Assembly (NCBI RefSeq): GCF_001194135.2
Contig: NC_068986.1
Coordinates: 90,039,747-90,103,746 of the forward strand
DNA length: 64,000 nt
Reading direction: 5' to 3'
Source: Octopus bimaculoides
Lineage: Eukaryota
The notes beneath the pieces were generated by a model. The model did not search any database. It was not told where the DNA came from and was given only the letters and a program-made list of their open reading frames with translations. This document shows positions 12,637-61,328 of the stretch, piece after piece (the first letter of the stretch is position 1; each line of letters opens with the position of its first letter). The position numbers were made by a program, and so were the translations under genes.

Positions 12637-12758
12637 CTTCACGATCTCCTGTTTCAACACTTGTAGTCTGAGTTTCTTTACTGTATGAGACATTCTCTTT
12701 TGGAGCAATGGTCGTCTCTGAAACCTTGCAGATGGACAACTTTACCTTCGGCCTAGTG
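12637..12758 (-). CDS. DYNC1I: Dynein intermediate chain coding exon 4 (Tctex1/LC8 light-chain binding region)
   Basis: Peptide TRPKVKLSICKVSETTIAPKENVSYSKETQTTSVETGDRE contains the LC8 motif KETQT (human ...PPREIVTYTKETQT). AG/GT boundaries, phase 2 to 1. Confidence 0.93.
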
Positions 12759-14557
12759 CTACAAACCAAAATAAAACCAATTTATGATGCAAGAAGAGTG
12801 ACAGAGCAATGTCAGTATTACAATTGCTGTAAGCCATGCAAAAAATTGTTAGACCTTATATCAAAGAAACAAATGATTTGCATTTGTTTTACACTTAAAA
12901 AAAAAAGTCACCTCCTGGACAAGATGCTAGTCCATTACCAATCAGTGTTTCATTAAATTCTTGATAATTAATTGCCAAATCTAGGTGGATTAAAGCAAGT
13001 AAAATAAATTAACTTGTCTCAAAAACTAAAATGTCTACAATGGATTGAACTAACAACCCATGAATTAGTAGTTCAATAATTGTTTATGCAACTACTTCAT
13101 TTCTAATTTTGTAAATAGTTAGCTTAATATTTGTTTTGATTTTACAGATGATATAATCCTTAATCATACAATATATTTCCCATTATATATACATATACAT
13201 ATATATATATATATATACACACATACACTTGCTGTATCTGGAGAAAGGCACAATACTATTTGCCCCACAGATCATCATCCTAGACAAGCGAGATGCCATT
13301 AAGATGGCATGCTCTTGAACTTTTGCAAGTCAACATCTGTAGAAAAAAACACAAGCAGGAAGAGAATTCCAGATGGCCAATATTCTGGGAAGAAAAGACT
13401 GAGCACAGTAATTAATGTGGAACCTTGGAGGGTTGGACACAACAAGGATGAGGAGAGAAGAGACAAACCTGGAATTATTTTCCTCAAGTAATGGATACGC
13501 TTCCAACAATCATAAACTACTATATTCAAGCTAATTTCAAAGTTATTTTACACTAACTGCACTAACTTTCAGAAACTCTTCGTGATATATGTGTAAGGGA
13601 ATAGTGCTATAAGTTCAAACCATACTCACTTGACATTTGAGTCATTAGCAATAAGGAGTGTACAAGCAACAACATCCTCATCATTGTACATTTGTTTTTC
13701 CTAGCTTATATAGGTAGGACAGATCCTTTCCAATACAATCCTACCATTTGTTGCATTCCTTTATCTCCTTTGTGAAGCTCACCACTTGTGTCTGTATATC
13801 TCTTGATTTTCCTCATCTACAATTTTCTTCCAGCTGGATATTTAGGTACGGCTTTACCCAACCATTATCATCCATACATATTTCTTATTCATACAATAGT
13901 CATCTCTCTTACACATTATATCTAATTCTGTTTATACCCAATTTTTCTCTCAGCTCATCTGTGCCTCATCATCTACGCACATTAACATTACATATCCAGT
14001 AAATTTTGCTTGCTTCATTTCTTTCCAACATTCACACATCCTGGGAAGATGGTAATTTAAAATACACATACTACAGAAAAAAAATTAATAACCAAATAAA
14101 AACTCACCAAACAACTTCAAATTTTTTTTTTTTTTTTTGGTACTTAAAGGGAAAAAAACAGTGATCATAACACTTTTGCAAGAGATCTGAGACCAGGAGA
14201 AAGAGGAGGGGGAAAAAAGACATTAAACAACATTCATGGGTGAACTTCAGCCTTAGTCTAAATGCCTGCAAGAGATTGATCTCCAATAAAGATACTCAAA
14301 AGTGAGGCGGTGAAAAACTGAAAAACGGTTTGCCTCTCAAGAACCAGTATAATCCAGTTAACAAACTTCCAATACAGTTTCTAGTTACTCAATATCAGTA
14401 AGAAACCCTAGGTCAGCACAATATGGAAGAAAAAAAATCACCTTCCCCAAAGTGCTGTCCTGTAGGAGTGAAACTAGAACCACCAATGTTACATTATGTC
14501 CAAATAATAATCTTTTTTATCTTTCTGAAGCTAAAACAATGAAAAGAAAACTCTTAC

Positions 14558-14636
14558 CTTCCTCCAGAAATTACCACATTTGTTTGTTCAGTGTCCTGTA
14601 CTGTGGGGCTTATGCTACCACTTCGACCACTATTCT
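14558..14636 (-). CDS. DYNC1I: Dynein intermediate chain coding exon 3 (serine-rich region)
   Basis: Acceptor ttttcttttag, peptide (E)NSGRSGSISPTVQDTEQTNVVISGG, donor AG|GTAAG. Its phase (1 to 2) exactly bridges exons 2 and 4. Confidence 0.85.
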
Positions 14637-14729
14637 CTAAAAGAAAATTAATACAGAAAATACACCAGATATTAGGCACAGTTTTTGAAAAGGCTGATCA
14701 ATAATAATAATAATAATAATAATAATAGC

Positions 14730-15262
14730 AATCCTTTCTACTATAAGCACAAGGCTTGACATTTTGGAGCAGAGGACTAATCAATAACATCAATTCCAGT
14801 GCTCAACTGGTATTTACTTTATTGACCCCGAGAGGTGATAAGCAAAGTTGACCTCAATGGAATTTGAACCCAGAAGAGATGCTGTGAAGAATTTTTCCCA
14901 GCATGCTAATAATAATGATAATAATGTGTAATTTAGGCACAAGGTTAGCAATTGGGAGGGGGGGGGTTAGTTGATTACATCAATCCCAGTGTTCAACTGG
15001 TGCTTATTTTATTGACCTCAAAAGGATGAAAGGCAGAATCAACCACAATGGAATTTGAACTCAGAATGGAAAGGATGAAAAGCTGCAAAGCACTTTACAT
15101 GGCATGCTAATGAGTGTCAGCTTGCCACCTTAATAATAATAATAATCCCTTCTACCATAGGCACAAGGCCTGAAATTTTGGGTTAAGAGAGTACCTATTT
15201 CATCAACCCCCAAAAGGAAGAAAGGCAAAGTCAACCTCAGTGGAATTTGAACTCAGAATATA
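14730..15262. mobile_element. Three stacked copies of a third SINE-like family separated by (AAT)n
   Basis: The block GCACAAGG...ACATCAA.CCCAGTG.TCAACTGG...ATTGACC...GGATGAAAGGCA...GGAATTTGAAC.CAGAA repeats three times. Related copies lie near 27130, 28430, 36500, 46800 and 56900. Confidence 0.7.
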
Positions 15263-16640
15263 AATAAGGCTAAAAAAAAAAGATAATTTAAAATATCACT
15301 TAAACCAGAGAAACGGAATTACTACCAAAAACATCTTTAAAGAGCTACACAATACATAAAATAGTTTTGGAGAAAAATTTACAATTGGATATTACTTTAG
15401 ACCAATTAAATTGAACTAAATTGTTAAACAATACAAAACTGAAAAAAAATTATGCATTTATCAAATAAAATTAAAATTTTTCATGTTTGGATAGTTCTGA
15501 AAAACAAGAAGAAAAACATTTCTTTCTTCAGAAGATTACATACAAATCAGAAACAATTTTGATAAAGAACACATTGTGTTCTTTCTAATTTTTAGCAGTG
15601 CATTTGCCATGCAATAAATGTATTTTTGATTAACAATAACCATGCTTCAGATATTTCCCTTGATTACAGATGGTACCACCTCTGATCAAAGCTGCAATAA
15701 ATATTTTGGAAGTTATGTGCAACTAATGTTAATAATAAACAAGTGAGAATATAGTGGGAGAAGGGGGGGGGGATACATTTTGCTAAGAAAAAGAAAATAG
15801 AATGTCAAAAGGGAAGAACATTTAAATATATATTTTAATAGATTTTCAGCAATTTTTAATGATATATCAAACATCTTTTAAATTGGTTATTAATTGCTTC
15901 TTACTCCTGCTTATCTATACTAGATTACAATGAATTTAATGTAGAATTATTTATTTCTTGGTCAGAGAGAACTGATTCTGTGAATAACTAAATACTTTAC
16001 TGCTGACCCAAATATTTACTAAATCTTTCAAAAAGGGCACTGTTGGTTTGATGTGTTCTTTCATAGCCATAGACTGATCAATACTTTGGTCAGAAACTAT
16101 AAGAAGCCAATCATATGAAGAGAGAGAGAGACTTCTCTTTGTCATAACATCTTTGCTCTGATTAAAAACAAAAATCACCATTCATATGGTTGTCATTTGT
16201 TTACAATCTTCCACGAAATCATGCCTGGCTACTGAGTTAGTTGTTACTCAAAGGACTGGTGGGGAAATATAACCTTACTTAGAAACAAATGAGAGTTGGT
16301 GACAACCATAGAAAAATTTACCTTGACAACTTTCATCTGACCTATGCAAGCATGGAAAAGTGGATATCAAAACAATAAAAGAGCAACTTCAAATAATTTC
16401 TCTAAAACAAATTTATACTACATATAGGTTCAAGTAGCAAATATGAAACAAGAATGGAATTATCCTCTAATGATAAAAAAATTAAGTGCTTAAGCTTTTA
16501 ATAAGGATTGGCATCTTTTCAAAATTCCTAACAGTTACATCTCAAATCTGCAGCTTCTAAGAACTGAAAATTCACGATTCTATGTATTCAGATAAGACAC
16601 AGTACATTGTTTAAAAACAATGTGAATATAACACTATATA

Positions 16641-16806
16641 GGTGTAGGAGTGGCTGTGTGGTAAGTAGCTTGCTTACCAACCACATGGTTCCAGGTTCAG
16701 TCCCACAGCATGGCACCTTGGGCAAGTGTCTTCTACAATAGCCTCGGGCCGACCAAAGCCTTGTGAGTGAATTTGGTAGACGGAAACTGAAAGAAGCCCG
16801 TCGTAT
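16641..16806 (+). mobile_element. tRNA-head SINE (family B, CORE-like) running into (TA)n
   Basis: GGAGTGGCTGTGTGGTAAG...GGTTCAGTCCC...ACCTTGGGCAAGT, the last being a CORE-SINE-like motif. A close antisense copy is at 53856-54007, with diverged copies near 28975, 35225, 51585, 52566, 59920 and 60265. Confidence 0.8.
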
Positions 16807-16810
16807 ATAA

Positions 16811-16852
<42 letters not shown>

Positions 16853-19800
16853 NNNNNNNNNNNNNNNNNNNNNNNNNNNNNNNNNNNNNNNNNNNNNNNN
16901 NNNNNNNNNNNNNNNNNNNNNNNNNNNNNNNNNNNNNNNNNNNNNNNNNNNNNNNNNNNNNNNNNNNNNNNNNNNNNNNNNNNNNNNNNNNNNNNNNNNN
17001 NNNNNNNNNNNNNNNNNNNNNNNNNNNNNNNNNNNNNNNNNNNNNNNNNNNNNNNNNNNNNNNNNNNNNNNNNNNNNNNNNNNNNNNNNNNNNNNNNNNN
17101 NNNNNNNNNNNNNNNNNNNNNNNNNNNNNNNNNNNNNNNNNNNNNNNNNNNNNNNNNNNNNNNNNNNNNNNNNNNNNNNNNNNNNNNNNNNNNNNNNNNN
17201 NNNNNNNNNNNNNNNNNNNNNNNNNNTTATATCTGTTTTTACATGCTTGCATATGTGATAAATGGCTTATAATCAATCAAAAATTGATATATGTTATTTT
17301 TCAGACATTTTAACCATAAAATAAAATACCAATTTTAAAAAAAAAGAAAACCAATCATATTTATAAATATAAAGAAATTTTTTTTCAATTGAAACAAAAA
17401 AAGTTTGTAAAATGAAAAATATTTTATTTTTCAATTTAATATTCAACTTACCACTTGTTGCAAATTATAACTTTTAACAAAGAAGAAGTTGGATTTCTCC
17501 AGCATTTAAAAAGAAAATTCTTGATTTTAATAAGCAAAAGAAAAAAAGCATTTCTCTTTTCTCAAAATGTGAATTTCTGAAGCAGCAAAATAGCCAATAA
17601 GATTTATTCAATCTTATTAAAATAGCAATAGACTTTTCATTTGTTTAAGTACCATCAACTTAAAGTCTCTTATAAGTATATATTTACAGGTAATGATCTT
17701 AAGACTACTGGTAGTAATTACAAGTCACAGGCAATTAAACAACTATAAAAAAATTCATAAACCTTATATTACTAATTTAACAAGAATTTTAAAAAATAAG
17801 ATAATATACAAATAATACTTAACATATACAAAAGTTATGTAACTGATTTATAACCCAACTGTTTAGACTCACACATCTCAATGTAAATCAAAATAATTCA
17901 TTAAAGTGTTTGTCTTAAACTCAACCAGTCATTTTTTTTTCTTCCAAAATGTTGAAAATATTTGAAAATTAATCATTATCTTCAAAGGATTTCTAAAATA
18001 AAATTCCCAAACCAGGAATATGGAAACACAATGGAAATCTCACAGGAATGGCTCCAAGATGAAGAAAGTATTTGGTTAGACAGAAAAACATTTTTTAAAT
18101 GTTCCAAAAAGAATTATATTTAATAACATTAATTATTTTGATAGTTGAAGGCCAATTTTTTGGAAGCAAGGGTTTATCAATTGAATATAACATTTATTGA
18201 TCCTGAAATACAAAGTCAATCTCATTAAAAGTTGAACTCAGATCAATAAGTTACCAATCTGGTTAAATTAACAGCTAACAAGAGAGCCTCTACACATTGC
18301 TCAACCTGTTAGAAAGAGCTACAAAATCTCCCTCAAGTGGCATCTTACCATCTTAAATAAGGAAACATTGGATAATGCAGTCCCAGATATAGCCCTAGTT
18401 CTCATTGCTAGCCATTCAACTATGGAGACGTATGGAAGGAAGACCAGTCAAGAGTTTTGGATGAACAAGATCACAACACCAGCATGTTTCACTCTTGTTG
18501 TTTTAACTAAATAACATCTGTGCCATACATAAGTGCAGCTTACTTTTATAAACAGCGGGAGCACAGTATAATTAAACACCAGCACTGTGTTTGGTCCAAG
18601 TTTAACTCTTGCTTGTTTAATCAAATACAGAAGAACAGCTTACTGCTGTAAACAATGGGGGCACTATAATTAAACAGCAGCACTGTGTTAACTTTTGCTG
18701 GTTTAATCAACTAATATAAGTGACACAAACAAGTACATTTTACTGTTGTAAGCAAGGGAGCACTGTATAATTAAAGGTGCTGTCTATTTTACAGTGCTGA
18801 ATTCTAAGTTCTCTAAAACAAAAAAAAACCTGGAAAGTTCAATGGAAAATACTCAACATCAACCTATCCAACCCACTCTATCAGCTTTGCCATTGGATGT
18901 AGTTCCTCATATGCATGTAAGTTGGTGTGCAACAGTCCATTGCCTGCTGAATTTTTCATATTCAGGCTCACACATCTTACAGGAAATTCCATAATTACAG
19001 TAAAATAAAAGTGGAAATCCTATTTTGAAAAAATGAAGCAAGCAGAATTATGTACCTTGGCAAGGGAGTACATAACAGTGTGGTAATAAGGTCAATAGCC
19101 TAATGTATCCATTTGAGGGCCACTTGTAACCATCTTACTAGATACTCAAGTTCACTATAGACTAACAATTGTAGCAAAAAGAGGGTAGGATTTTGTTAAG
19201 AAATTCTAACTCAGAATTTCTAAATCAGAAACTATGAAGGATGTTGTATGCTTTAACCTTTGGAGTGCTGGAAAGAAGCGACTGTGGTTGCTGTACAGTT
19301 TATTACATTACACTAAAGTATGTGAGCTGTGTCATCAATGAAATAAATTCTCGTTCCCAAGTGTGGTTCATATTTTTTTATCAATCAGATTCAAGTATTC
19401 ATTGCTGCCAAATGCATTTTAAAGAGAATATGGACTGGTAATGATAGGAAATGGTGATATATGGAACATACCACGTATTTGCAAATGCAACTTTAGTTAA
19501 TTTTAAATGGAAGATGACAATGTTATATGGCAAGTCCCAAATTTTAATTTCCTCCTTTCTCCTTCTGACATATTGATAGTATCAACATGGTAGATACCAA
19601 TCTGAGAGAGGAAAAGATGTTACACTATGGTCATGATCTAACTACTAACCACAATAACTCAGAGACTACCAGCTTCTTGAAAGTGGTTGGGTCCTTCATG
19701 GAGGAATCTGGTAGGGATGTATCATCCAAGGTCAAGTGAAGGAAAAATTTTCACCAGTCAAATAACATTACAACAACTAAGTTTATCTAACAGTTCTAGG

Positions 19801-20637
19801 ACATCATCAACAACTACAGTAAGTTGATCAAAAGCCACTAATGAGCAGATGGTGCATAAGGCCATCAGGGAGAAGTGTTTTGTGATGGAGAAGGGATACA
19901 TCACACCCAGCAAGACCCAGGAAAATTGCATCATCTAATCTATTGAACTTTTCATGAGAGGTACAGCATGAAATTCTTGAACAAGAGACTAAGTCTACTA
20001 GTCTGAAAAAAATTACTTCAGGCTTTGTGAAAATGGAATTATCAAATAGTTGACTGACATTGACTGCCATTAAGAGATTCTAGGCTATACAATAGTCCAC
20101 AACATTAGTCTTTTGTTGTATTACATTTAACAAGAGAATAAGGTAATACATACATATCACAGGTTGTAACAGTTATATGGAGTGTTAAAGTATGTTATAA
20201 AAACTCAGTTGTCAAAAAACCAGGTTTTCAGTAAAAACCTTCCTTCAGAACATTATTCTAATAAGTGGAAATTTTCATTACACGTGCGCACACACACACA
20301 CACACACATTACTATTAACCCAAGTATTTACCAAATCTATAGTACCAACCAACACCAGGGAATGAGAGCAATAGCTAAATAAAGGATTTTATAATTAGGG
20401 AAATCTAACAAGTTTAAAAGGAATGAAGTCATAGTTTTTAAAATAGTATTAACAAAATACCACATAAGGGAGAACAATAATAAAAACACATCTAGCATTG
20501 TTTTCTGCACAATAACTTCAGAAATATCAAACTACCATAGCGATTATATGCCAGACAAACAGTGGTAAGGAACCATTGGAAACCATGTACCCTCTGTGTG
20601 TGTGTGTGTAAATATAAAGTGTCCCAAAAGTTGTACT

Positions 20638-20677
<40 letters not shown>

Positions 20678-21709
20678 NNNNNNNNNNNNNNNNNNNNNNN
20701 NNNNNNNNNNNNNNNNNNNNNNNNNNNNNNNNNNNNNNNNNNNNNNNNNNNNNNNNNNNNNNNNNNNNNNNNNNNNNNNNNNNNNNNNNNNNNNNNNNNN
20801 NNNNNNNNNNNNNNNNNNNNNNNNNNNNNNNNNNNNNNNNNNNNNNNNNNNNNNNNNNNNNNNNNNNNNNNNNNNNNNNNNNNNNNNNNNNNNNNNNNNN
20901 NNNNNNNNNNNNNNNNNNNNNNNNNNNNNNNNNNNNNNNNNNNNNNNNNNNNNNNNNNNNNNNNNNNNNNNNNNNNNNNNNNNNNNNNNNNNNNNNNNNN
21001 NNNNNNNNNNNNNNNNNNNNNNNNNNNNNNNNNNNNNNNNNNNNNNNNNNNNNNNNNNNNNNNNNNNNNNNNNNNNNNNNNNNNNNNNNNNNNNNNNNNN
21101 NNNNNNNNNNNNNNNNNNNNNNNNNNNNNNNNNNNNNNNNNNNNNNNNNNNNNNNNNNNNNNNNNNNNNNNNNNNNNNNNNNNNNNNNNNNNNNNNNNNN
21201 NNNNNNNNNNNNNNNNNNNNNNNNNNNNNNNNNNNNNNNNNNNNNNNNNNNNNNNNNNNNNNNNNNNNNNNNNNNNNNNNNNNNNNNNNNNNNNNNNNNN
21301 NNNNNNNNNNNNNNNNNNNNNNNNNNNNNNNNNNNNNNNNNNNNNNNNNNNNNNNNNNNNNNNNNNNNNNNNNNNNNNNNNNNNNNNNNNNNNNNNNNNN
21401 NNNNNNNNNNNNNNNNNNNNNNNNNNNNNNNNNNNNNNNNNNNNNNNNNNNNNNNNNNNNNNNNNNNNNNNNNNNNNNNNNNNNNNNNNNNNNNNNNNNN
21501 NNNNNNNNNNNNNNNNNNNNNNNNNNNNNNNNNNNNNNNNNNNNNNNNNNNNNNNNNNNNNNNNNNNNNNNNNNNNNNNNNNNNNNNNNNNNNNNNNNNN
21601 NNNNNNNNNTATATATATATGTAGATATATATATGTATATATATATGCAGATATACATATGTATGTGTATATATATGTGTGTGCGTGTATATATATATAT
21701 ATATATATA

Positions 21710-21965
21710 GTGAATCCAAAAAAAAGAACAAACAAGAAAAAAAAACAACCCGAGGACGTGGTACAAGTACTGTATTATCAGATGCTCAGGAAAGGAAAGA
21801 AAGAGGATTTAATATTTTGAGCCAAGCTCTTCTTCAAAAATAGAGGAAAGTCCAAAGGAAGGGAAGACGTAGGAAGGAAATCACCAACGATACACAAGCG
21901 GTTACATTTTAAAATGACCGGAAAGGATTGGGTGACGGAAAAGTTATTTCTAAGATGGGAGACTG
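21710..21965 (-). mobile_element. Penelope-like terminal repeat (pLTR) belonging to the RT fragment above
   Basis: Same strand as and downstream of the PLE RT. Its reverse complement aligns by eye with 53585-53830 (TCTTAGAAA.AACTTTTCC ... TTTCCTTTCCTGAGC.TC ... CACGTCCTC). Confidence 0.7.
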
Positions 21966-22683
21966 CAAGAGGAGATGTGTGTGTGTGTGTGTGGAGATAT
22001 GTTGGGGGGAATATGTGCGTGCGCACAGGTGTGTGTGTGTGGACTTTGTGTCGCTTAATGTCATGGGAAGAATTTGCAGTAGGAATTTTAGGTAGAAGTG
22101 GCTCTCTTCTGTGAGTCTCCCTTCACATGTGCATGTGACAATGATCAGTAGAAAGCTGTTTAACTGGTAGTTTGAAATATGTGTGTGTGCATGTATGTAT
22201 ATGTTGTGTGTGTCTGTTTTGTGTGCAGTGTATGCCTGTGTCTGTGTGTGCGTGTGTGTATGTATGTATGTATGAGTGTGTGTTGTGTGTGGGAGGTATG
22301 TGTGGGTTCATTTGTGCGTGCGTGTGTGTGCCTGTGTATATATGTGTGTATGTGTGTGCTTGTGCATGTGTGTATGAATGAGGGGTTGTGTGGAGGTATA
22401 TGTGCGTTTTTTTTGCACGTGTATGCACATGCATGTGCATGTAGTTGTATGTGCGTGTATGAGTGTATATGTGCATGTGGGTGTGTGTATGTGGAGTTGT
22501 GAGTGTTAGGTATGTGTGCATGCATGTGTACTTGTAGGTATATATTGTGTGCGCATGTGTATGTATGTGTGCATGTGCACGTGCGCATGCATATGTGCGT
22601 ATGTCTATGTGTGTAATTGTGAATGTCTGTATGAGTGTGTGTTGTATGGGAGGTACGTGTGCACACATGCGCGAGTGTGTGTA

Positions 22684-23470
22684 TCCTCAATGCATGAACA
22701 GGCGGGCAAGGTACTGGAACTGGGTCTCAAAATCCTGGTCGCGGCTGCACAAACGTCAGAAGCGGAGGAACTGAGAGTAGGGGATGGTCCGTTTGGTGTG
22801 GAAAGGATGGGAGGAGGAGAAGTTGAGGCAGAGGTGGGAATCTGTCGGTTTGAAGAAGGCAGAGGTGGTGAGAGAGTGGGAGGGGAGGTCAATGGTAAGA
22901 GAGATATTAAGGAAGTTAACTGAGGTGTTAGAGATGGTAGAAGTAAATTGGAGAGAGGGGTGGAAGTTAGAGAGGAAAGAGATGAAGTGGTAGAGTAGTT
23001 CACAGGAGAGGGAGGTGGCACCTATATAGTTGTCTTATGTAGCAAACGTATAGCTCTGGGGTCGGCCTGGAGAATTGGGAGAATGCTTGGGCCTCAATGT
23101 AGCCAACAAATAGGTTGGCGAAATTGTGGCCCATTCTCATTCCCATCGCAACCCCAGACTACTGTTGGTAGGTTTTCTCCAGCGAACATAAAGCAGTTGA
23201 GGGTGAGGATGAGCTCTGCCAGATGAAGAAGGGTGGAGGTGCTGGGTGTGGGGTCAGGGTGACGGTCAAGGAAGTATTGGAGGGCTAAGAGACCGTCGTT
23301 GTGGGGAATCACTGTGTATAGGGATTTGATGTCCAAGGTGAAGAGGAGGTGTGAAAGGCCAGGAGGGAAGGAAAAGGAATTGAAGAGGCGAAGGGCATGA
23401 TTAGTGTCGTGTATGTGGGATGGGAGGGGAGCAACTAAAGGGGACAGGATGCGGTCATGGTACTTGGAAA
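22684..23470 (-). mobile_element. Penelope-like element reverse transcriptase fragment (frameshifted)
   Basis: LFTLDIKSLYTVIPHNDGLLALQYFL...LLHLAELILTLNCF, then after frameshifts GVAMGTRMGPNFANL and IPYSQFLRF*RLCS...GY. These are hallmark PLE RT and thumb motifs. Confidence 0.88.
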
Positions 23471-23473
23471 TTT

Positions 23474-23504
<31 letters not shown>

Positions 23505-23519
23505 GAGGAGAGAGAGAGA

Positions 23520-23562
<43 letters not shown>

Positions 23563-24201
23563 CTAAACATGTCTGTAAATGTGTGAGGTCTGTGCATAAA
23601 TACTCAGTTTCATTTATCACTGGCAAGGGTACAAGACAGTTTTGCACAGCCATTTTGGCATTACCTATTTAATGTTGCTGACTAAATTGGCATCAGACAT
23701 TTTAATATTTCTCTCATTCTCTCCTCACATGCCCTCACTTTCACACTCTATTTGTATGAGCTTATTTATGTGTGCACATGCATGTGTGTGTATTTGATTC
23801 CAGTGCCAAAACAGGTTGGATGTCCAGTCAGCCATGCCAAGTCGTCAGCATCCAAACAGCTGTGTCCAAATGCTACATTTTGAAGTGCTAAGGATATGTT
23901 TACATTCCTTGTTGGCATTATGAACTGTTGCTCTACACTTTCAAATAATTATGGAATAAAAAATCCCTTAATTGGAAAAAAAACCAGTGAGGGTTGGTGA
24001 CAAGAAGAGCATCTGCTGTAAAATCCTACCCCTAAGTCCCCATCCCAACCCATGCTAAATTGGAAAAACAGACATCAAACAAGCAATCATCATTTAACAT
24101 CCCTTTTCCCTGCTGTCATGGATTGGGTGGTTTTGAGAGGATCTGGTGAACCACAAGGCTCTGCCAAGTTTCCTGTTTTCTATATTAAACATAATTTTTG
24201 A

Positions 24202-25877: not shown

Positions 25878-25965
25878 CATTTGGTGGTATACCCAAGTCT
25901 TGAAGTAAAGCATCAGTTTCAGCTCTCAGGTCTTGTGGGGGTTTTCCTGGTTTCACTTCTTCATT
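25878..25965 (-). CDS. DYNC1I: Dynein intermediate chain coding exon 2
   Basis: Acceptor ttgttttag, peptide NEEVKPGKPPQDLRAETDALLQDLGIPPN+G, donor GTTAGT, phase 0 to 1. It resembles the DIC second helix (human REAEALLQSMG). Confidence 0.88.
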
Positions 25966-31248: not shown

Positions 31249-31347
31249 ATCTTTTAACTTGCGACGTTGTTCCTTTTCTTGTCTCTCTTTTCTCATCTGC
31301 TCGAGACGAGCTTTCTTACGTTCTAACTCCGCTTTTCGGTCAGACAT
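31249..31347 (-). CDS. DYNC1I: Cytoplasmic dynein-1 intermediate chain, first coding exon (p150/NudE-binding N-terminal helix)
   Basis: Translates to MSDRKAELERKKARLEQMRKERQEKEQRRKLKD, closely matching the DIC N-terminus (fly MDRKAELERKKAKL...). It ends at a GTAAG donor, phase 0. Confidence 0.95.
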
Positions 31348-31637
31348 CTTTGTCCGTCAACCTGTGAGGATATCAGTGAAGATAATTTCTCAATACCCAC
31401 CACAGACGTCTCATCTACGGGAAGACATTACTCACAAGATGACGTCACTCCCCACCTCTTATTTAATATACAGAGCTAGCTAAACACTAATAACGAAATA
31501 ATTAGCATTTCACTTCAAATATATACTACAAATTATGCACATAATAAACGATGTACAGATTTTATATTTATATANNNNNNNNNNNNNNNNNNNNNNNNNN
31601 NNNNNNNNNNNNNNNNNNNNNNNNNNNNNNNNNNNNN

Positions 31638-31669
<32 letters not shown>

Positions 31670-32273
31670 ATTAAAATAACAAAAACTTTATTATATTTTG
31701 TTATAAAAATGTAAAACCTTTGAAAACTAAAACAACAATTTCTATTAAGAATTGGTTATTTTACTGATAAAAGTTGTTACTAAATATTCTAAATTAGTTT
31801 ATGGTAAAGCAAAATAAATTGCAGAAAGCAATATGAAATAAGAAGAAAAAAGAAAATTAAGCTGCTAGCTCACAAACGTACAGCTGTTATTATTTGGAGG
31901 TCACGTGATTGATGTGTGTTTCATAATAAATAAACGAAACGTCAATTTGACCCTCGATCACCTTGTGCCACGTGGTTGTAACACAGCAAAAGTTTTGTGT
32001 GGTCATCTAATAGTAACAACGACCACAACAGTAATGGACACAATGGAAATTTTGTAAGGAAAACAATAATTGATGCCAGTTCATAAATTGAACTTACTTC
32101 ACCGTCCCTTGAAGAATGGAAGCAACGTTCATCCATAGCTTGAATTGACTTCAGAAACAACAGAAATCCCTAAGCTAGGAACTATTTCCTTAGCATCTAA
32201 TGTTACTTTTTAATTATCTGTGATAATTGTGTTAATGATAATATTAAATTAAGCAGAATAATAAACGTTTACT
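31348..32273. promoter_or_regulatory. Putative bidirectional promoter between DYNC1I and SDHAF3
   Basis: The divergent ATGs are 926 bp apart, including a 62-N gap. The interval has TGACGTCA at 31440-31447, GTCACGTGAT at 31900-31909 and CCACGTGG at 31968-31975, and CpGs are visibly retained compared with the introns. Confidence 0.65.
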
Positions 32274-32453
32274 ATGGCGAGTAATCCAGGACATGTGAGA
32301 CGCGTAAAAGCCTTGTATAAAGCTATTTTGAAAATCCATCAGGGCCTTCCCATTCATTACAGAGCAATCGGAGACCAATATGTTAAAGATGAGTTTCGCC
32401 ATAACAAAACTTCAAACACCAAGCAAGCAGATATATTTATGCATGAATGGACG
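32274..32453 (+). CDS. SDHAF3: Succinate dehydrogenase assembly factor 3 (ACN9, LYR-family), exon 1
   Basis: MASNPGHVRRVKALYKAILKIHQGLPIHYRAIGDQYVKDEFRHNK...FMHEWT carries the LYK tripeptide and the GDQYVKDEFR signature. It ends at a GTAGGG donor, phase 0. Confidence 0.95.
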
Positions 32454-35893: not shown

Positions 35894-36061
35894 AAATATT
35901 ATGTGACTATAGCTAAACAGCTCAGTCACAAAAATCGCACTGGAGTGATTGGAGAAAATTTGTCCTCAGACTTTTTGGATTGCTTTAATTCAGAACAACT
36001 TGGTCAACTCTATGAATTGTTCCAAGAAACACAGAAACCTCTACAAGAAAAGGAAAAATGA
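35894..36061 (+). CDS. SDHAF3: SDHAF3 exon 2 (to stop codon)
   Basis: Acceptor tttattttacag, peptide KYYVTIAKQL...EQLGQLYELFQETQKPLQEKEK-stop (human EQIGQLQELMQEATKP). AATAAA follows at 36166-36171. Total protein is 115 aa. Confidence 0.93.
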   Translation, partial: KYYVTIAKQLSHKNRTGVIGENLSSDFLDCFNSEQLGQLYELFQETQKPLQEKEK

Positions 36062-37642: not shown

Positions 37643-39594
37643 ATATGTATATAGATGTATATGTATATATGCATATGTATAGATGTATATGTATAGACTT
37701 CAAGAATGCTCCGGGGATACTTGTACCAGCAGACAAAACAAGTAACATTTACACTGTTGATATTGAACTGTGTAAGTCTATGATTAGGAAGGAATTTCGC
37801 AGCAAACATAGGTGCTGATGCCACGTAAAAAGCACTCGTGTCCGTGCTGCGTAAAAGCACCCAGCACACTCTGTATAGTGATCGGCGTTAGGAAGGGCAT
37901 CCAACCGTAGAAACCATGCCAAAACAGACATGGAGTCTGAACAGCCCTTCATCTGGTCAGCTCTCGTCAAACCCATGCCAGCTTGGAAAACGGACGTTAA
38001 ATGATGACGATGACTCAATTACTATTTGTATTACTAGTGCACTTCCTCTTCCGATGTAATGTTTAAATTCACTGGTAATTGTTCAGTTTGGTTAGATTCA
38101 AAAAGTAAATATAAATTAAGGGGTAGATAAGTTAACTTTTTACACTACTTTTTACACAACATAAACACTGGCGACAACAGATTTGCCCCTTGGTACTACT
38201 AAAGCAGAGTGGTCCCGAACACGCAGTCGCGTGTCCGCGCTAGCTAGTCGTGAGTGGTCGATCCTATTATTTTTAAACTTCAAACTTCATTTGTTTTCTA
38301 TTTTGATAAATTCTCTGTTGAAAATTATATTTTTATATTTTAAATAATTTGCAATTTCAGAAAATATATTTTTATATTAAATTTGCGTTTTCTAATTTGA
38401 TAAATTCTACGGACACAAACAGAGGTGAACGAGTGATAGATAGATAGATAGATAGATAGACAGACAGNNNNNNNNNNNNNNNNNNNNNNNNNNNNNNNNN
38501 NNNNNNNNNNNNNNNNNNNNNNNNNNNNNNNNNNNNNNNNNNNNNNNNNNNNNNNNNNNNNNNNNNNNNNNNNNNNNNNNNNNNNNNNNNNNNNNNNNNN
38601 NNNNNNNNNNNNNNNNNNNNNNNNNNNNNNNNNNNNNNNNNNNNNNNNNNNNNNNNNNNNNNNNNNNNNNNNNNNNNNNNNNNNNNNNNNNNNNNNNNNN
38701 NNNNNNNNNNNNNNNNNNNNNNNNNNNNNNNNNNNNNNNNNNNNNNNNNNNNNNNNNNNNNNNNNNNNNNNNNNNNNNNNNNNNNNNNNNNNNNNNNNNN
38801 NNNNNNNNNNNNNNNNNNNNNNNNNNNNNNNNNNNNNNNNNNNNNNNNNNNNNNNNNNNNNNNNNNNNNNNNNNNNNNNNNNNNNNNNNNNNNNNNNNNN
38901 NNNNNNNNNNNNNNNNNNNNNNNNNNNNNNNNNNNNNNNNNNNNNNNNNNNNNNNNNNNNNNNNNNNNNNNNNNNNNNNNNNNNNNNNNNNNNNNNNNNN
39001 NNNNNNNNNNNNNNNNNNNNNNNNNNNNNNNNNNNNNNNNNNNNNNNNNNNNNNNNNNNNNNNNNNNNNNNNNNNNNNNNNNNNNNNNNNNNNNNNNNNN
39101 NNNNNNNNNNNNNNNNNNNNNNNNNNNNNNNNNNNNNNNNNNNNNNNNNNNNNNTTTTTTTGAATCTAACGTAAACAATGACCTCCGCTACAAAAACGGA
39201 GAAGACCACATAGAAACAATATACTACTACATCCTTCACCAAATATACAAATAATAAATCATCATTTTACTTTGAGTGACTTTTAAGATCAATTAAATTG
39301 GATCCGGAAATTTTTGTACATTCGGATTCTACATAGTAAATACTATATGCATAGAAAATTTCATTAAAAAATATTCATTTTTCTGAAAGTTATGACCTCC
39401 CAAAGTCTGGGGGGTAAAACCCTGTAGTTATGCCTTGAATTAATTGTCTTTCTATAGTATATTTTATTCTTTTATGAAACAACTCTTAGACTTTTTGTAG
39501 TCATTCGGGAATTTCCAGACAATGTAGTGTATATATTACGGAGATGTACTTGCATAGCAAGCGACCTGATCTGAGATCGTGTGCTGGAACGAAA

Positions 39595-45798: not shown

Positions 45799-46000
45799 TT
45801 GAAATTGAATATCAACGATGATTATTCTGTGAGTTATGGTGATAATGCTTTGGAAACGGAGGCAAGTGCCTCTTCATTTAGTTTCAACATCATACGTAAC
45901 AAGTTGTTTCAAAACAAAGAAATTTCTTTGCTTCCTTTTAATTCAACTTGTGTGCGAATCAGTACAACAAATGATTTTTCTGTACAACTGAGAACAAAAG
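45799..46000 (+). CDS. NEMP1: NEMP exon (luminal domain)
   Basis: Poly-T tract then AG, peptide LKLNINDDYS...LLPFNSTCVRISTTNDFSVQLRTK+G, donor GTATGT. Phase 0 to 1. Confidence 0.85.
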
Positions 46001-47336: not shown

Positions 47337-47499
47337 TTTGACTGAGGACTGGTGGACCAGGAGGCGACCCCAGGCTCCAATCTGGTTTGGCAGAGTTTCT
47401 ACAGCTGGATGCCCTTCCTAACGTCAACCAGCTGTAGAAACTCTGCCAAATCAGATTGGAGCCTGTTATTGCCTCCTGGTCCACCAGTCCTCAGTCAAA
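47337..47499. repeat. Fold-back inverted repeat, 72-bp arms, 19-nt loop
   Basis: 47337-47408 matches the reverse complement of 47428-47499 at 67 of 72 positions. Confidence 0.95.
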
Positions 47500-49535: not shown

Positions 49536-49608
49536 GAATTGAAATATGGCTAGTCATCACTTTTGGACTTGGAATCCTGATGTTTGCCAATGCAGACCAC
49601 TGGAGTCA
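49536..49608 (+). CDS. NEMP1: NEMP exon (transmembrane helix 1)
   Basis: (G)IEIWLVITFGLGILMFANADHWS resembles human FDPKLFLVFLLGLMLFFCGDLLS. AG/GT boundaries, phase 1 to 2. Confidence 0.88.
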
Positions 49609-50072: not shown

Positions 50073-50166
50073 GAATTCTTCATTTCATTACCTGATGGGA
50101 ACTGTACTTGGAATTATTTTTTCTGTGCTGATTATATTATTCCTCATTAGTCGGATGATTTCAAAG
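50073..50166 (+). CDS. NEMP1: NEMP exon (transmembrane helix 2)
   Basis: (Q)NSSFHYLMGTVLGIIFSVLIILFLISRMISK resembles human [31 protein letters not shown]. Donor GTAAGG, phase 2 to 0. Confidence 0.92.
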
Positions 50167-50334
50167 GTAAGGCCTGCTGGTAGAAACATGTCAATATTTA
50201 TTGTGTTTATATGAATGATAATCATCATGATTATAATCTTTAACCCTCAATGCACTGATTAAATTTTTGCTGATGATGTAATGCATTAATCATATGCAAA
50301 TAGTTTTTGCAACTGCTTTACATTGTCCGGTTCG

Positions 50335-52091: not shown

Positions 52092-52432
52092 AAAGTCGTT
52101 ACAGCTGCTTTTCTTCTGTCTGGAGTATCTGGAATGCTTTACACATTTCATTGGTTTTACCAGAATGTGTTCCTGTTGACCAAAGAGTACTGGATTTCTC
52201 TTCTAGTTTACCTCACAGTAACTGGTGTACTCTCATTCTTTTTATCCTATCGATTTGGACCAGTCACTGATATCCGATCTAAAAAAATTCTCTGTTGGAT
52301 TATACAAGGTCTTGGTTTATTTTTAGTATTTCATGGAACTCAACTCACCGAAGTGTCCTCTGCTGCTATCATTATTATTCTTGCTGTTTATAATCGACCA
52401 CAGTGTCTTGACAATTTCTACAAACGCTTCAA
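52092..52432 (+). CDS. NEMP1: NEMP exon (transmembrane helices 3-5)
   Basis: KVVTAAFLLSG...YWISLLVYLTVTGVLSFFLSYRFGPVTDIRSKKILCWIIQGLG... matches the NEMP domain motif YW...SF...Y(K/R)(Y/F)GP...RS...L.W.LQ. Donor GTGAGT, phase 0 to 2. Confidence 0.95.
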
Positions 52433-55659: not shown

Positions 55660-56155
55660 ATCATCATCATCATCATCGTTTAACGTCCGCCTTCCATGCT
55701 AGCATGGGTTGGGCGATTTGACTGAGGACTGGTGCAACCAGATGGCTACACCAGGCTCCAATCTGATTTGGCAGAGTATCTACAGCTGGATGCCCTTCCT
55801 AACGCCAACCACTCAGAGAGTGTAGTGGGTGCTTTTACGTGTCACCCGCACGAAGGCCAGTCAGGCGGTACTGGCAATGGCCATGCTCAAAATGATGTAT
55901 TTTACATGCCACCTGCACAGGAGCCAGTCTGGCGGCACTGGCAACGATCTCGCTCAAATGTCTTTACACTTGCCACCGACACAAGTACCAGGAAAGCGAC
56001 ACTGGGCACAGATGCCATCACGATTTCGCTTTCGCTTTCGCTTGCCCCAACAGGTCTTTGCAAGCTGAGTTTCGTATTCAATGAAGGAGACATCGTTGGC
56101 ATGGGTGCCAGTTGTCGAATTTAGTTCGATTTCGATTGCCTCAACAGGTCTTCGC
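55660..56155 (-). mobile_element. RTE 3' UTR fragment
   Basis: (CAT)n followed by CGTTTAACGTCCGC...CCATGCTAGCATGGGTTGG...CTACAGCTGGATGCCCTTCC, as in the RTE copies at 61.7-64 kb. Confidence 0.85.
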
Positions 56156-59408: not shown

Positions 59409-59586
59409 CCCTTAAGCATTTAAACTGGCCAGATTTGGCCTCTCACACCTACTGTATAATGTCATTCTAAAACTAAACAATCCCATCATTAAGATTTCAA
59501 TGTTATGAGATAATACATGATTAATTCAAAACAGTGTGAATGAATAAGCTTTGCATTTGATAGAGTAATATCTGAATGCTAAAGGG
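59409..59586. mobile_element. Second TTAA-type MITE of the same family, opposite orientation
   Basis: TTAA|CCCTTAAGCATT...AATGCTAAAGGG|TTAT. The interior is partly the reverse complement of 58030-58176. Confidence 0.65.
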
Positions 59587-59878
59587 TTATGTAAGTTAAC
59601 TGGATTTAGCCTCCAATAGCATTCATCATCAATTTTTTCCATGCTGGCATGAGTTGGACAAAAATTATTAAAGCCGTATTCAATGGCTGGATGCCTCTCA
59701 TCTCATCTCATGTTATCAACTCTTGTCTGTTTTTTTTAAAAATGGTATTTTTATTTTACTGATTCTTCACACATTGAAACCAATGGAACCACTGAACTAT
59801 ACAGTATGAATTGTTTATGGGAGATGTAAACATAACATTGCACCCCAAACAATGTTAATGTAAAGACATGGAAAGATG

Positions 59879-59920
<42 letters not shown>

Positions 59921-61166
59921 GACAATGGCTTTCTGAACAGTTTCCATTTTCCAATTTTGTTTACAAGGCATTTGTCAGCTAAAGACTGTAGTTGAAGACA
60001 CTTGTCTAAGATGCCATGTAGTGAGGCATGGACTGGAATCTAATCTAAAAGCAGGTGATTATGAAGAAAACTTCACAGCCTGTCAACAACAATGTACTAT
60101 TATTCTTAATTACCAGTTAAGGTAGTTGTTTTTTTTTTTTTATGAATTAGTTGTTGGTTATTATTGTCAGTTAGTCTTCAAGTTTGTTCTGCTCAAGTAG
60201 ATCTGTAGTCAGAAGCATTGCAGCTGTGACATTCCCATCTTTTTCTCAAATAATACTGTGGATAGGTGCAGGCATGGCTGTGTGGTTAAGAAGATTGTTT
60301 TATAATATGTGTTTTCAGGTTCAGTCCCACTGAGCAAATATCTTCTGCTATAGTCCCAAGCTGACAAATGCCTTGTAAATGAATTTAGCAGACAAGAAAT
60401 TGTAGGAAGCCCATCACGTGTGTGTGAGTGAATGTTCTCCACACTTGGTACTGCTTCAACAATACCATGGTAAATATTAGCATTTTTGTTGACATTATGA
60501 CCAGTCACTCTACATTTTTGAAGACCTCTGGATTAAAGAGAAATCCCTTATGTGGCAAAATAGGTGAGGGTTAGTGACAGGAAGAGCATCCAGCTATAAA
60601 ATCTTTCCTCAGATAACTCACCATCTAATCTATACCAGCAGTGAAAAATGGACATTATATGAATTAACGAAATGTATCTAAAACTATATTGTACCATGTG
60701 TTCTATTTCTAAGATGGCAGAGTATGACTTGAGGGAGATGAAACTGTTATTTCTAGCAGGTGTATTTCCATTTTATAGGCTTTTCTAGGCCAGTGAGATT
60801 GTTGTAGTTAATGGCCAATCTGAACATCTACAAGATAAAACAGAATGAGCTGATAGTTTGCAGTTTGGTGGGCTGACAGGTAGCTTTAAAAAGGGTTATA
60901 CTACTCTTTCTAGGAGTACTTGTCACTTTCCCATAGGATGGAGAAGACTTGAGTTGTTAGTGAGTAGGAAATACAATCAGCTGTAACAGTACATATGCCA
61001 GTTTTCAAAATTTCTGTTATAAAAAGAAAGGAACACACCAGTAGCATAGTGTATCCCTACATGACCTCAGTCCAGTAAAAGTGTAAAGAAAATCTCTGCC
61101 CCCATACTGTATGGATTGTAAATATGGATATAAAATATTGATTGTTGTCCTGTTTTTCCTTTTTAG

Positions 61167-61328
61167 GTATAAATATTTCCCACGAAAACACAGATTTTTA
61201 ACAGAAGAAGAATACATTACTCAAGGAGCAGTAGAAACAAAGATTGCCTTGGAAAAGCTCAGGGAGTATTGCCGCAGTCCGGACTGTGACCATTGGAAAG
61301 TAGTCAACAAACTTAGTTCTCCTAAAAG
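61167..61328 (+). CDS. NEMP1: NEMP exon (nucleoplasmic conserved region)
   Basis: YKYFPRKHRFLTEEEYITQGAVETKIALEKLREYCRSPDCDHWKVVNKLSSPK(R) matches human [45 protein letters not shown]. Phase 2 to 2; the gene continues beyond the window. Confidence 0.95.

What the first reader, a model, noticed from the sequence alone, without database searches (positions are those of the whole stretch)
12637..61328. Gene order DYNC1I-SDHAF3-NEMP may be an ancestral bilaterian microsyntenic block from the Hox/Dlx/tachykinin chromosome
Seen: the three genes are adjacent in this order. Known (from memory): human DYNC1I1, DLX5/6, SDHAF3 and TAC1 are neighbours on 7q21.3; TAC3, NEMP1, NAB2 and STAT6 cluster on 12q13.3; DYNC1I2 and DLX1/2 (2q31) and NEMP2, NAB1 and STAT1 (2q32) share 2q. 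Overlaying these paralogons gives DYNC1I-(DLX)-SDHAF3-(TAC)-NEMP-NAB, the same order as here. Inference: this animal keeps the housekeeping scaffold of that block despite cephalopod genome reshuffling, with no recognisable Dlx or tachykinin gene between the three. No single human chromosome shows the whole trio, so simple pairwise synteny would miss it.
Basis: partly seen in the sequence, partly recalled or inferred. Interest (0 to 1): 0.7.

Follow-up and report, generated by a model that had tools for sequence, protein, structure and literature searches.

The report
Octopus dynein–SDHAF3–NEMP gene neighbourhood
Three ordinary housekeeping genes do sit side by side in this octopus sequence. 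Only the first two, the dynein intermediate chain gene and SDHAF3, start back to back less than 1 kb apart in a brachiopod and an acorn worm too, so that pair is ancient and the three-gene block is not shown to be.

Summary
The window holds three neighbouring genes.
- **DYNC1I** (minus strand): only its 5' part is here.
- **SDHAF3** (plus strand): complete, two exons, 115 aa.
- **NEMP** (plus strand): most of the gene is here.

An independent chromosome-scale Octopus sinensis assembly shows the same three genes in the same order. It is colinear with the window across four of the N gaps, so the adjacency is not a scaffolding artefact. All gaps fall in introns or intergenic DNA, with one exception: gap 38468-39154 hides NEMP's first coding exon.

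- **Ancient pair.** DYNC1I and SDHAF3 lie head to head, 556-926 bp between start codons, in Octopus (two species), Argonauta, the brachiopod Lingula and the hemichordate Saccoglossus. DYNC1I exon 1 is exactly 99 nt in all five. This pair most likely predates the protostome-deuterostome split and is probably held together by a shared short promoter region.
- **NEMP not shown to be ancient.** NEMP next to SDHAF3 was seen only in Octopus. It was absent within 10 kb in nine other non-cephalopod animals, including the two that keep the pair. For vertebrates, what I confirmed shows only that SDHAF3 and NEMP1 each sit near a tachykinin gene.
- **No Dlx or tachykinin gene** lies in the window.

This is a modest comparative-genomics result.

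The parts
31249..31347 (-). DYNC1I (cytoplasmic dynein intermediate chain) coding exon 1, 99 nt, from the ATG at 31347 to a GTAAGC donor
   Evidence: Found by tblastn and read directly from the sequence. It is 97% identical in protein to the first exon of the O. sinensis 690-aa Dynein_IC2 plus WD40 gene. The exon is exactly 99 nt followed by GT in five species.
25878..25965 (-). DYNC1I exon 2 (NEEVKPGKPPQDLRAETDALLQDLGIPPN plus a 1-nt overhang)
   Evidence: Acceptor and donor sites were read. The exon is 100% identical in protein to O. sinensis and is also present in Argonauta and Lingula.
12637..12758 (-). DYNC1I exon carrying the Dynein_IC2 motif (TRPKVKLSICKVSETTIAPKENVSYSKETQTT...)
   Evidence: Pfam PF11540, E 3.8e-11. 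Splice sites were read. Its phase does not fit exon 2, so at least one exon between them is undetected.
31348..32273 (.). Divergent intergenic region between the DYNC1I and SDHAF3 start codons (926 bp, including the 63-N gap 31575-31637). This is the candidate shared or bidirectional promoter.
   Evidence: CpG observed/expected is the highest in the window here: 1.26 and 1.12 at 30.9-32.1 kb, against a median of 0.20. O. sinensis is contiguous across the gap, which sits in an (AT)n run. A TGACGTCA palindrome 93 nt upstream of the DYNC1I ATG is kept in Octopus and Argonauta.
32274..32453 (+). SDHAF3 exon 1 (60 codons, holding the LYR-type motif region)
   Evidence: Pfam Complex1_LYR_2. The donor site was read.
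35894..36061 (+). SDHAF3 exon 2, with the stop codon at 36059-36061
   Evidence: The spliced 115-aa protein finds proteins named SDHAF3 across animals.
38468..39154 (.). Assembly gap that hides NEMP coding exon 1 (start codon and signal-peptide-like region)
   Evidence: The O. sinensis NEMP coding sequence starts 150 bp before the point that aligns to window 39157, so it falls inside the gap.
45799..46000 (+). NEMP exon (luminal region; its end reaches the start of the Pfam NEMP model)
   Evidence: Splice sites and phase. It is part of the 317-aa joined model that matches PF10225 positions 2-236.
49536..49608 (+). NEMP exon (first transmembrane segment)
   Evidence: Splice sites were read. Its phases fit both the exon before and the exon after.
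50073..50166 (+). NEMP exon
52092..52432 (+). NEMP exon (the largest; transmembrane core)
   Evidence: Pfam NEMP, E 6e-23 on its own. Splice sites were read.
61089..61328 (+). NEMP exon, the last one visible in the window. The gene continues beyond 64000.
   Evidence: Pfam NEMP, E 7e-17 on its own. The in-phase acceptor is at 61089 and the exon's last base is 61328, with the donor GT following.

Best explanation
The window is an ordinary stretch of an Octopus chromosome. It is a close relative of O. sinensis but not that species. It carries three housekeeping genes.

**An old, tightly bound pair.**
- DYNC1I and SDHAF3 are transcribed in opposite directions from start codons less than 1 kb apart.
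- The same arrangement, orientation and spacing occur in a brachiopod and a hemichordate.
- The pair therefore most likely existed in the last common ancestor of protostomes and deuterostomes.
- The most likely reason it persists is that the two genes share one short, unmethylated promoter region. Any breakpoint there would damage at least one essential gene. This mechanism is inferred, not shown.
- The pair has nevertheless been broken in several lineages: bivalves, a gastropod, a nemertean and a priapulid.
- In mammals the two genes lie roughly 1 Mb apart, and the published order puts DLX5/6 between them.

**A third neighbour documented only in Octopus.**
- NEMP starts about 3 kb downstream of SDHAF3, on the same strand.
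- Its adjacency may be a cephalopod-lineage arrangement.
- Alternatively it may be the tightening of an older, looser linkage on the same ancestral chromosome.
- The present data do not decide between these two.
For: **Gene identities and structures.**

**Same trio in an independent assembly.**
- The trio is annotated in an independent chromosome-scale O. sinensis assembly.
- That assembly is colinear with the window.

**The pair in other animals.**
- Argonauta hians has the divergent DYNC1I/SDHAF3 pair.
- Lingula anatina has an annotated 637-aa Dynein_IC2/WD40 gene whose first coding base is 906 bp from the SDHAF3 start, on the opposite strand.
- Saccoglossus kowalevskii has an unannotated exon, MADRRAELERKKARLQQMREEKKRKEEERKRQA, starting 557 bp upstream of SDHAF3 on the opposite strand. 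tblastn gives E 2e-11 without composition correction and 5e-5 with it.
- In all five species this exon is exactly 99 nt, starts with ATG and is followed by a GT donor.

**Promoter region.** It has the least CpG depletion in the window.

**NEMP not adjacent elsewhere.** NEMP is not the downstream neighbour in Lingula or Saccoglossus. It was not found within 10 kb of SDHAF3 in seven further animals.
Against: **Limits on the promoter and co-expression claims.**
- Transcription start sites, co-expression and promoter sharing were not measured.
- No sequence motif is shared by the intergenic regions across phyla.

**Limits on the Saccoglossus evidence.** It rests on one 33-codon exon. The rest of that gene lies outside the 10-kb flank.

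**Limits on the negative results.**
- They cover only 10 kb on each side of SDHAF3.
- They depend on gene calls plus my tblastn.
- A NEMP or DYNC1I gene 20-500 kb away would have been missed.

**Evidence pointing the other way.** In mammals SDHAF3 lies about 0.2-0.6 Mb from TAC1, and NEMP1 lies within 200 kb of TAC3. If TAC1 and TAC3 are whole-genome-duplication paralogues (from memory), this is some indirect evidence that SDHAF3 and NEMP were already neighbours before the vertebrate genome duplications.

**Missing taxa.** I could not obtain squid, Nautilus, annelid or amphioxus loci.
Confidence: 0.7

Rival explanations
1. The whole trio DYNC1I-SDHAF3-NEMP is one ancestral bilaterian microsyntenic block. 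Octopus kept it, and in vertebrates it was spread over the chromosome 7, 12 and 2 paralogous regions by the genome duplications.
For: - The DYNC1I-SDHAF3 half is demonstrably ancient.
- In mammals TAC1 lies near SDHAF3 (PMC11434253), and TAC3 lies within 200 kb of NEMP1, NAB2 and STAT6 (PMC10629031).
- If TAC1 and TAC3 are duplication paralogues (from memory), this places SDHAF3 and NEMP in one ancestral neighbourhood.
- My negative results reach only 10 kb.
Against: - NEMP is not the neighbour of SDHAF3 in the two non-cephalopod animals that keep the pair (Lingula, Saccoglossus).
- It was not within 10 kb in seven others, including the compact Trichoplax genome.
- From memory, DLX1/2 and NEMP2 on human chromosome 2 are roughly 18 Mb apart. 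That argues for chromosome-scale rather than gene-scale linkage.
- The paralogon overlay was built after seeing the octopus order.
Confidence: 0.2
2. The head-to-head DYNC1I/SDHAF3 arrangement arose independently in cephalopods, brachiopods and hemichordates. It is convergence or chance, not inheritance.
For: - The pair is absent in most sampled lineages: bivalves, a gastropod, a nemertean, a priapulid, a placozoan and a hydrozoan.
- No sequence motif is shared across phyla in the intergenic region.
Against: With roughly 15,000-25,000 genes per genome, the chance that one given gene is the divergent upstream neighbour of SDHAF3 is below 1 in 10,000 per lineage. It is seen in three phyla, with the same orientation and similar spacing of 556-926 bp.
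Confidence: 0.04
3. The adjacency is an artefact of scaffolding across the N gaps in this assembly.
For: Nine N gaps lie in the window, several of them next to microsatellites. Gaps 16853 and 20678 could not be bridged with the data held.
Against: - An independent chromosome-scale assembly of O. sinensis has the same three genes in the same order and orientation.
- It aligns colinearly with the window from 23.5 to 43.0 kb, across four gaps.
- Argonauta shows the same DYNC1I/SDHAF3 junction.
- The DYNC1I exons keep their order and strand across the two unbridged gaps.
Confidence: 0.02

Closest known systems
Conserved ancestral microsyntenic pairs with 5'-5' orientation, for example HSPD1-HSPE1 (Irimia et al. 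2012, PMC3514665)
   Same: Two unrelated housekeeping genes are transcribed divergently from start points less than 1 kb apart. The arrangement and orientation are kept across phyla. The usual explanation is a shared, bidirectional promoter.
   Different: - DYNC1I-SDHAF3 is not adjacent in human, so human-anchored pair screens would not list it.
- The pair is lost in many lineages.
- Co-expression and promoter sharing are untested here.
- I found no paper naming this pair. The supplementary tables of the main screens were not available to me.
The vertebrate DYNC1I1-SLC25A13-SEM1-DLX6-DLX5-SDHAF3-TAC1 neighbourhood at human 7q21.3, the SHFM1/DLX5-6 regulatory block (PMC3371700, PMC10616856, PMC11434253)
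   Same: The same two genes, DYNC1I and SDHAF3, are linked within roughly 1 Mb. The linkage of DYNC1I1 to the block is conserved from human to fish.
   Different: - In vertebrates four genes, including the Dlx pair, lie between them.
- SLC25A13 is immediately downstream of DYNC1I1, so the 5' end of DYNC1I1 faces away from SDHAF3.
- The vertebrate linkage is explained by long-range Dlx enhancers inside DYNC1I1, not by a shared promoter.
- The octopus window has no Dlx gene.
Metazoan microsyntenies retained in coleoid cephalopods despite genome reorganisation (Schmidbaur et al. 2022, PMC9023564)
   Same: It is an old gene linkage that survived the large-scale reshuffling of coleoid genomes.
   Different: That study counted blocks of at least three genes shared with at least six distant species. 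The supplementary text I could search names none of these three genes. By that criterion the trio is not shown to qualify. The two-gene pair would be too small to be counted.

Membership tests
Cytoplasmic dynein 1 intermediate chain (DYNC1I) | N-terminal coiled-coil region (MSDK/R..AELERKK...) followed by the Dynein_IC2 light-chain-binding motif | tested here: met
   Exon 1 sequence. Pfam PF11540, E 3.8e-11.
Cytoplasmic dynein 1 intermediate chain (DYNC1I) | C-terminal WD40 beta-propeller | tested here: inconclusive
   No WD40 exons are in the window. The O. sinensis gene whose first two exons are 97-100% identical to the window's encodes 690 aa with WD40 families. The propeller is therefore present in the orthologue but lies outside this window.
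SDHAF3 / ACN9 (LYR-motif family) | Complex1_LYR-type domain with the L-Y-K/R motif near the N terminus | tested here: met
   Pfam PF13233, E 1e-14, and PF05347. The motif reads ALYKAIL in exon 1.
SDHAF3 / ACN9 (LYR-motif family) | Orthology to SDHAF3 rather than to another LYR protein | tested here: met
   - The best relatives are proteins named SDHAF3: 94% identity to O. sinensis and 84% to Argonauta.
- Further relatives of 50-59% identity occur in molluscs and other animals.
- A phase-0 intron after ...EWT is seen at the same point in scallop and Gigantopelta, with read-through alignments at that point in four others.
SDHAF3 / ACN9 (LYR-motif family) | Role in maturation of the succinate dehydrogenase iron-sulfur subunit | not testable with these tools
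   Function is inferred from orthology only.
NEMP (nuclear envelope integral membrane protein) | The multi-pass transmembrane NEMP domain (PF10225) | tested here: met
   The joined exons give one match to model positions 2-236 of 249, E 4.4e-62.
NEMP (nuclear envelope integral membrane protein) | N-terminal signal peptide and C-terminal nucleoplasmic domain | tested here: inconclusive
   Exon 1 falls in gap 38468-39154. In O. sinensis it reads MDVILLLLILHLIPS.... The C-terminal exons lie beyond 64000.
Ancient conserved divergent gene pair (bidirectional-promoter type): DYNC1I/SDHAF3 | Same two orthologues adjacent, 5'-5', in several phyla on both sides of the protostome-deuterostome split | tested here: met
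   Octopus (two species), Argonauta, Lingula and Saccoglossus.
Ancient conserved divergent gene pair (bidirectional-promoter type): DYNC1I/SDHAF3 | Intergenic distance under about 1 kb | tested here: met
   Start codon to start codon: 926 bp (with the gap), 843, 831, 905 and 556 bp. Transcription start sites are unknown.
Ancient conserved divergent gene pair (bidirectional-promoter type): DYNC1I/SDHAF3 | Shared promoter activity or co-expression | not testable with these tools
   The only indirect sign is the least CpG-depleted stretch of the window.
Ancestral bilaterian three-gene microsyntenic block DYNC1I-SDHAF3-NEMP | All three orthologues close together in several distant phyla | tested here: not met
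   The trio was seen only in Octopus. NEMP is not within 10 kb of SDHAF3 in nine non-cephalopod animals, including the two that keep the pair. Distances beyond 10 kb were not tested.

The most novel reading that the evidence does not exclude
The DYNC1I/SDHAF3 divergent pair is a promoter-sharing unit more than 500 million years old. The vertebrate DLX5/6 landscape could then be derived from it. One inversion, with a breakpoint in the shared promoter, would have turned the DYNC1I-to-Dlx segment round and placed the Dlx pair between the two genes. This would have happened before the two vertebrate genome duplications. Under this reading NEMP, and the tachykinin and NAB/STAT genes, belonged to the same ancestral neighbourhood. 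Octopus would then preserve the most compact surviving version of it.
Probability: 0.2. Interest if true: 0.5.

Novelty: new member of a known kind. Interest (0 to 1): 0.3.

Why it matters
- **A marker for ancestral gene order.** A divergent gene pair that has kept its spacing and orientation since before protostomes and deuterostomes split is useful for reconstructing ancestral gene order.
- **A test case for shared promoters.** It lets one ask whether shared promoters hold genes together. The repeated independent losses give natural controls.
- **A link to a human disease locus.** In humans, rearrangements that separate the DYNC1I1 region from DLX5/6 cause split-hand/foot malformation. Knowing the pre-vertebrate arrangement could help explain how that regulatory landscape was assembled.
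- **Limited scope.** The genes themselves are ordinary housekeeping genes. Nothing here suggests a new function.

Tried and rejected
**Searches that failed.**
- Two searches of solved-structure sequences, with DYNC1I exon 1 and with pooled minus-strand open frames, gave nothing.
- Two of my three homologue searches returned nothing: SDHAF3 exon 1 and 210 aa of NEMP. I therefore obtained no NEMP or DYNC1I orthologues from other species and could not compare chromosome coordinates.

Human DYNC1I2, human SDHAF3 and two homeodomain sequences were used only as tblastn probes. Nothing rests on their accuracy.

**Literature.**
- No paper links DYNC1I1, SDHAF3 and synteny.
- The searchable supplements of Schmidbaur 2022 hold no SDHAF3, NEMP or DYNC1I name.
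- The supplements of Irimia 2012 and Simakov 2022 are not held.

**Argonauta.** The gene downstream of SDHAF3 (107 aa, no Pfam hit) could not be shown to be NEMP. All similarity to the window in that stretch is repeat DNA.

**Promoter and intron checks.**
- No 8- to 10-mer is shared by the intergenic regions of all the lineages compared.
- A conserved intron block at 24528-24789 was tested as a missing DYNC1I exon and as a structured RNA. It has no clean reading frame or phase, no Rfam match and no folding signal.
- Rfam found nothing in the whole window.

Full report
**What the window is**

The window is AT-rich (35% G+C) and strongly CpG-depleted. It contains nine N gaps. Its open frames and repeats are those of an animal genome full of microsatellites and transposon debris.

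Over 23.5-43.0 kb it aligns at about 90% nucleotide identity, colinearly, with Octopus sinensis chromosome CM016864.1 at 25.28-25.30 Mb. Its SDHAF3 protein is 94% identical to that of O. sinensis. The source is therefore an Octopus species close to O. sinensis, but not that species.

**The three genes**

*DYNC1I* lies on the minus strand.
- Exon 1 is 31249-31347 and encodes MSDRKAELERKKARLEQMRKERQEKEQRRKLKD before a GTAAGC donor.
- Exon 2 is 25878-25965.
- A third exon, 12637-12758, carries the Dynein_IC2 motif (Pfam E 3.8e-11).
- The first two exons are 97% and 100% identical in protein to the start of an annotated O. sinensis gene. That gene encodes 690 aa with Dynein_IC2 and WD40 families.
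- No WD40 exon is present in 1-12636, so the gene leaves the window on the left.
- Exon 2 ends with one extra base and the 12758 exon begins with one. The phases do not fit, so at least one small exon between them is undetected.

*SDHAF3* lies on the plus strand and is complete.
- Its exons are 32274-32453 and 35894-36061, and the product is 115 aa.
- It matches Pfam Complex1_LYR_2.
- Its relatives across animals are named succinate dehydrogenase assembly factor 3.

*NEMP* lies on the plus strand.
- Five exons (45799-46000, 49536-49608, 50073-50166, 52092-52432, 61089-61328) have mutually consistent splice phases.
- Joined, they give a single match to Pfam NEMP positions 2-236 of 249 with E 4e-62.
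- The 3' end lies beyond the window.

The finding's limits, 12637 and 61328, are exon ends of the two outer genes.

**The gaps**

- Five of the nine gaps abut (AT)n-type microsatellites and one abuts a (GATA)n run.
- Gap 31575-31637 lies in an (AT)n run between DYNC1I and SDHAF3. O. sinensis reads straight through at that point.
- Gaps 37460 and 41067 lie in intergenic or intronic DNA that is colinear with O. sinensis, apart from transposon-sized insertions and deletions.
- Gap 38468-39154 is the exception. The O. sinensis NEMP coding sequence starts 150 bp before the base that aligns to window 39157. NEMP exon 1 is therefore hidden in this gap.
- Gaps 16853 and 20678 lie in DYNC1I introns. 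I could not bridge them. One of them may hide the missing small exon.
- Two further gaps, 53457 and 58397, lie in NEMP introns.
- None of this threatens the gene order, which O. sinensis confirms independently.

**Testing the interpretation in other animals**

I reached SDHAF3 orthologues through a full-library profile search and then an alignment-based search. For each I read up to 10 kb on either side of the gene. The table below lists what was found.

| Species | Upstream of SDHAF3 | Downstream of SDHAF3 |
|---|---|---|
| Octopus sinensis | DYNC1I, opposite strand | NEMP, same strand |
| Argonauta hians | DYNC1I, opposite strand | 107-aa product with no domain; could not be identified |
| Lingula anatina (brachiopod) | 637-aa Dynein_IC2/WD40 gene on the opposite strand, its first coding base 906 bp from the SDHAF3 start | Serine hydrolase, then an Enhancer-of-polycomb gene (Pfam EPL1) |
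| Saccoglossus kowalevskii (hemichordate) | Unannotated exon MADRRAELERKKARLQQMREEKKRKEEERKRQA, 557 bp upstream, opposite strand | Unrelated 197-aa gene |
| Pecten maximus | Nothing found | Sulfotransferase |
| Crassostrea virginica | HlyIII-family gene | Two sulfotransferases |
| Gigantopelta aegis | Nothing found | Nothing found |
| Lineus longissimus | Nothing found | 1014-aa gene with faint WD40 hits, opposite strand |
| Priapulus caudatus | JUPITER-domain gene, divergent | 550-aa gene with no domain |
| Trichoplax sp. H2 | N-glycanase gene | 162-aa gene with no domain |
| Hydractinia | 478-aa gene with no domain | Phospholipase A2 |

In all five species that have the pair, DYNC1I exon 1 is exactly 99 nt, starts with ATG and is followed by a GT donor. 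Distances between the two start codons are 926, 843, 831, 905 and 556 bp. In the seven species from Pecten to Hydractinia, neither DYNC1I nor NEMP lies within 10 kb of SDHAF3.

**What follows from this**

- The same divergent pair, with the same spacing, occurs in molluscs, a brachiopod and a hemichordate. Chance is not a credible explanation, at below roughly 1 in 10,000 per lineage.
- The simplest reading is that the pair was present in the ancestor of protostomes and deuterostomes and has been lost several times.
- The two non-bilaterians sampled give no sign of an older origin, but two species is thin evidence.
- NEMP is adjacent to SDHAF3 only in Octopus. In the two non-cephalopods that keep the pair, other genes follow SDHAF3.
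- The three-gene block is therefore not shown to be ancestral. My test reaches only 10 kb, so a looser linkage remains open.

**The vertebrate side**

- The SHFM1 locus holds DYNC1I1, SLC25A13, SEM1, DLX6 and DLX5 (PMC10616856).
- SLC25A13 sits immediately downstream of DYNC1I1 (PMC12568336).
- The DYNC1I1-DLX5/6 block of 1.37 Mb is kept from human to fish (PMC3371700).
- In hg19 coordinates a SEM1 intron lies at 96.20 Mb, DLX6-AS1 at 96.58 Mb and an SDHAF3 intron at 96.76 Mb. A variant annotated as DLX5/TAC1 intergenic lies at 96.95 Mb (PMC11434253).
- Deletions covering fragments of DYNC1I1 and SLC25A13 lie at 95.64-95.80 Mb. DYNC1I1 and SDHAF3 are therefore about 1 Mb apart.
- In cattle, TAC3, MYO1A, NEMP1, NAB2, STAT6 and LRP1 share a 200-kb interval (PMC10629031).

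If TAC1 and TAC3 are duplication paralogues (my memory, not tested), SDHAF3 and NEMP belonged to one pre-duplication neighbourhood. That is indirect support for an old, loose SDHAF3-NEMP linkage.

The invertebrate arrangement leaves no room for a Dlx gene between DYNC1I and SDHAF3. The vertebrate order with Dlx in the middle must therefore be derived. A single inversion with one breakpoint in the shared promoter would produce it. This is inference, partly from remembered strand information.

**Mechanism**

The proposed glue is a shared short promoter region.
- In favour: the distances are under 1 kb in four independent lineages.
- In favour: 30.9-32.1 kb is the least CpG-depleted stretch of the window (observed/expected 1.26 and 1.12, against a median of 0.20). 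That pattern is expected of an unmethylated promoter.
- In favour: a TGACGTCA palindrome 93 nt upstream of the DYNC1I start codon is kept in Octopus and Argonauta.
- Against, or missing: no motif is shared across phyla. No transcription data were available. The pair has been broken repeatedly, so the constraint is not absolute.

**Other checks**

- No homeobox and no tachykinin-type peptide motif is present anywhere in the window.
- Rfam finds no RNA family.

**Verdict**

There is an ancient two-gene pair, with a third neighbour documented only in Octopus.
- This is a new example of a known kind of conserved divergent gene pair. It is of modest interest.

Noticed in passing
window 24528-24789 (minus strand, in the DYNC1I intron about 1.1 kb downstream of exon 2): This is the only non-exonic block conserved between Octopus and Argonauta: about 81% identity over 260 bp, with a core of about 110 nt nearly invariant in three species. 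It has no clean reading frame or splice phase for a DYNC1I exon. It has no Rfam match and no folding signal (z +0.9). It may be a regulatory element or an alternative exon.
   Followed up: partly
window 31440-31447, and 31902-31907 / 31969-31974: A CRE-type palindrome TGACGTCA lies 93 nt upstream of the DYNC1I start codon. It is kept in both Octopus species and in Argonauta. Two CACGTG boxes 300-370 nt upstream of the SDHAF3 start codon are kept only between the two Octopus species.
   Followed up: partly
window 39900-41100: The second least CpG-depleted stretch of the window (observed/expected 0.86-1.04, against a median of 0.20) lies just downstream of the gap that hides NEMP exon 1. This fits an unmethylated NEMP promoter and 5' region.
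   Followed up: no
window 23097-23603 (-), 42511-42726 (-), 62276-63347 (both strands): Transposon debris is present. It includes reverse-transcriptase-like open frames in a DYNC1I intron and a DDE_1 transposase remnant in the first NEMP intron (Pfam E 4e-4, below the family cut-off). Tails resembling retrotransposon open reading frames lie right of the last NEMP exon.
   Followed up: partly
window, many copies, e.g. 34626-34868, 37749-38018, 47342-47520, 55726-56121, 61740-62030, 63801-63999: A short interspersed repeat is present in many copies on both strands. Its translations read ...LQLDALPNANHSESVVGAF... and ...FNVRFPSWHGLD.... It is also abundant in the O. sinensis and Argonauta loci, and it accounts for most cross-species hits outside exons.
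   Followed up: no
L003 (Pecten maximus) 13817-20831 and L004 (Crassostrea virginica) 13567-17753: In both bivalves the genes just downstream of SDHAF3 are sulfotransferases on the opposite strand, although of different Pfam families. This may be a bivalve-specific neighbourhood that replaced the ancestral one.
   Followed up: no
L001 (O. sinensis) 14407-17772 and 20988-23240, against window 36991-37643 and about 42760: O. sinensis carries two insertions of about 2.2-2.7 kb that the window lacks. One lies between SDHAF3 and NEMP and contains a retrotransposon-like open frame. The other lies in the first NEMP intron. Spacing in this region is evolving quickly, while gene order is stable.
   Followed up: no
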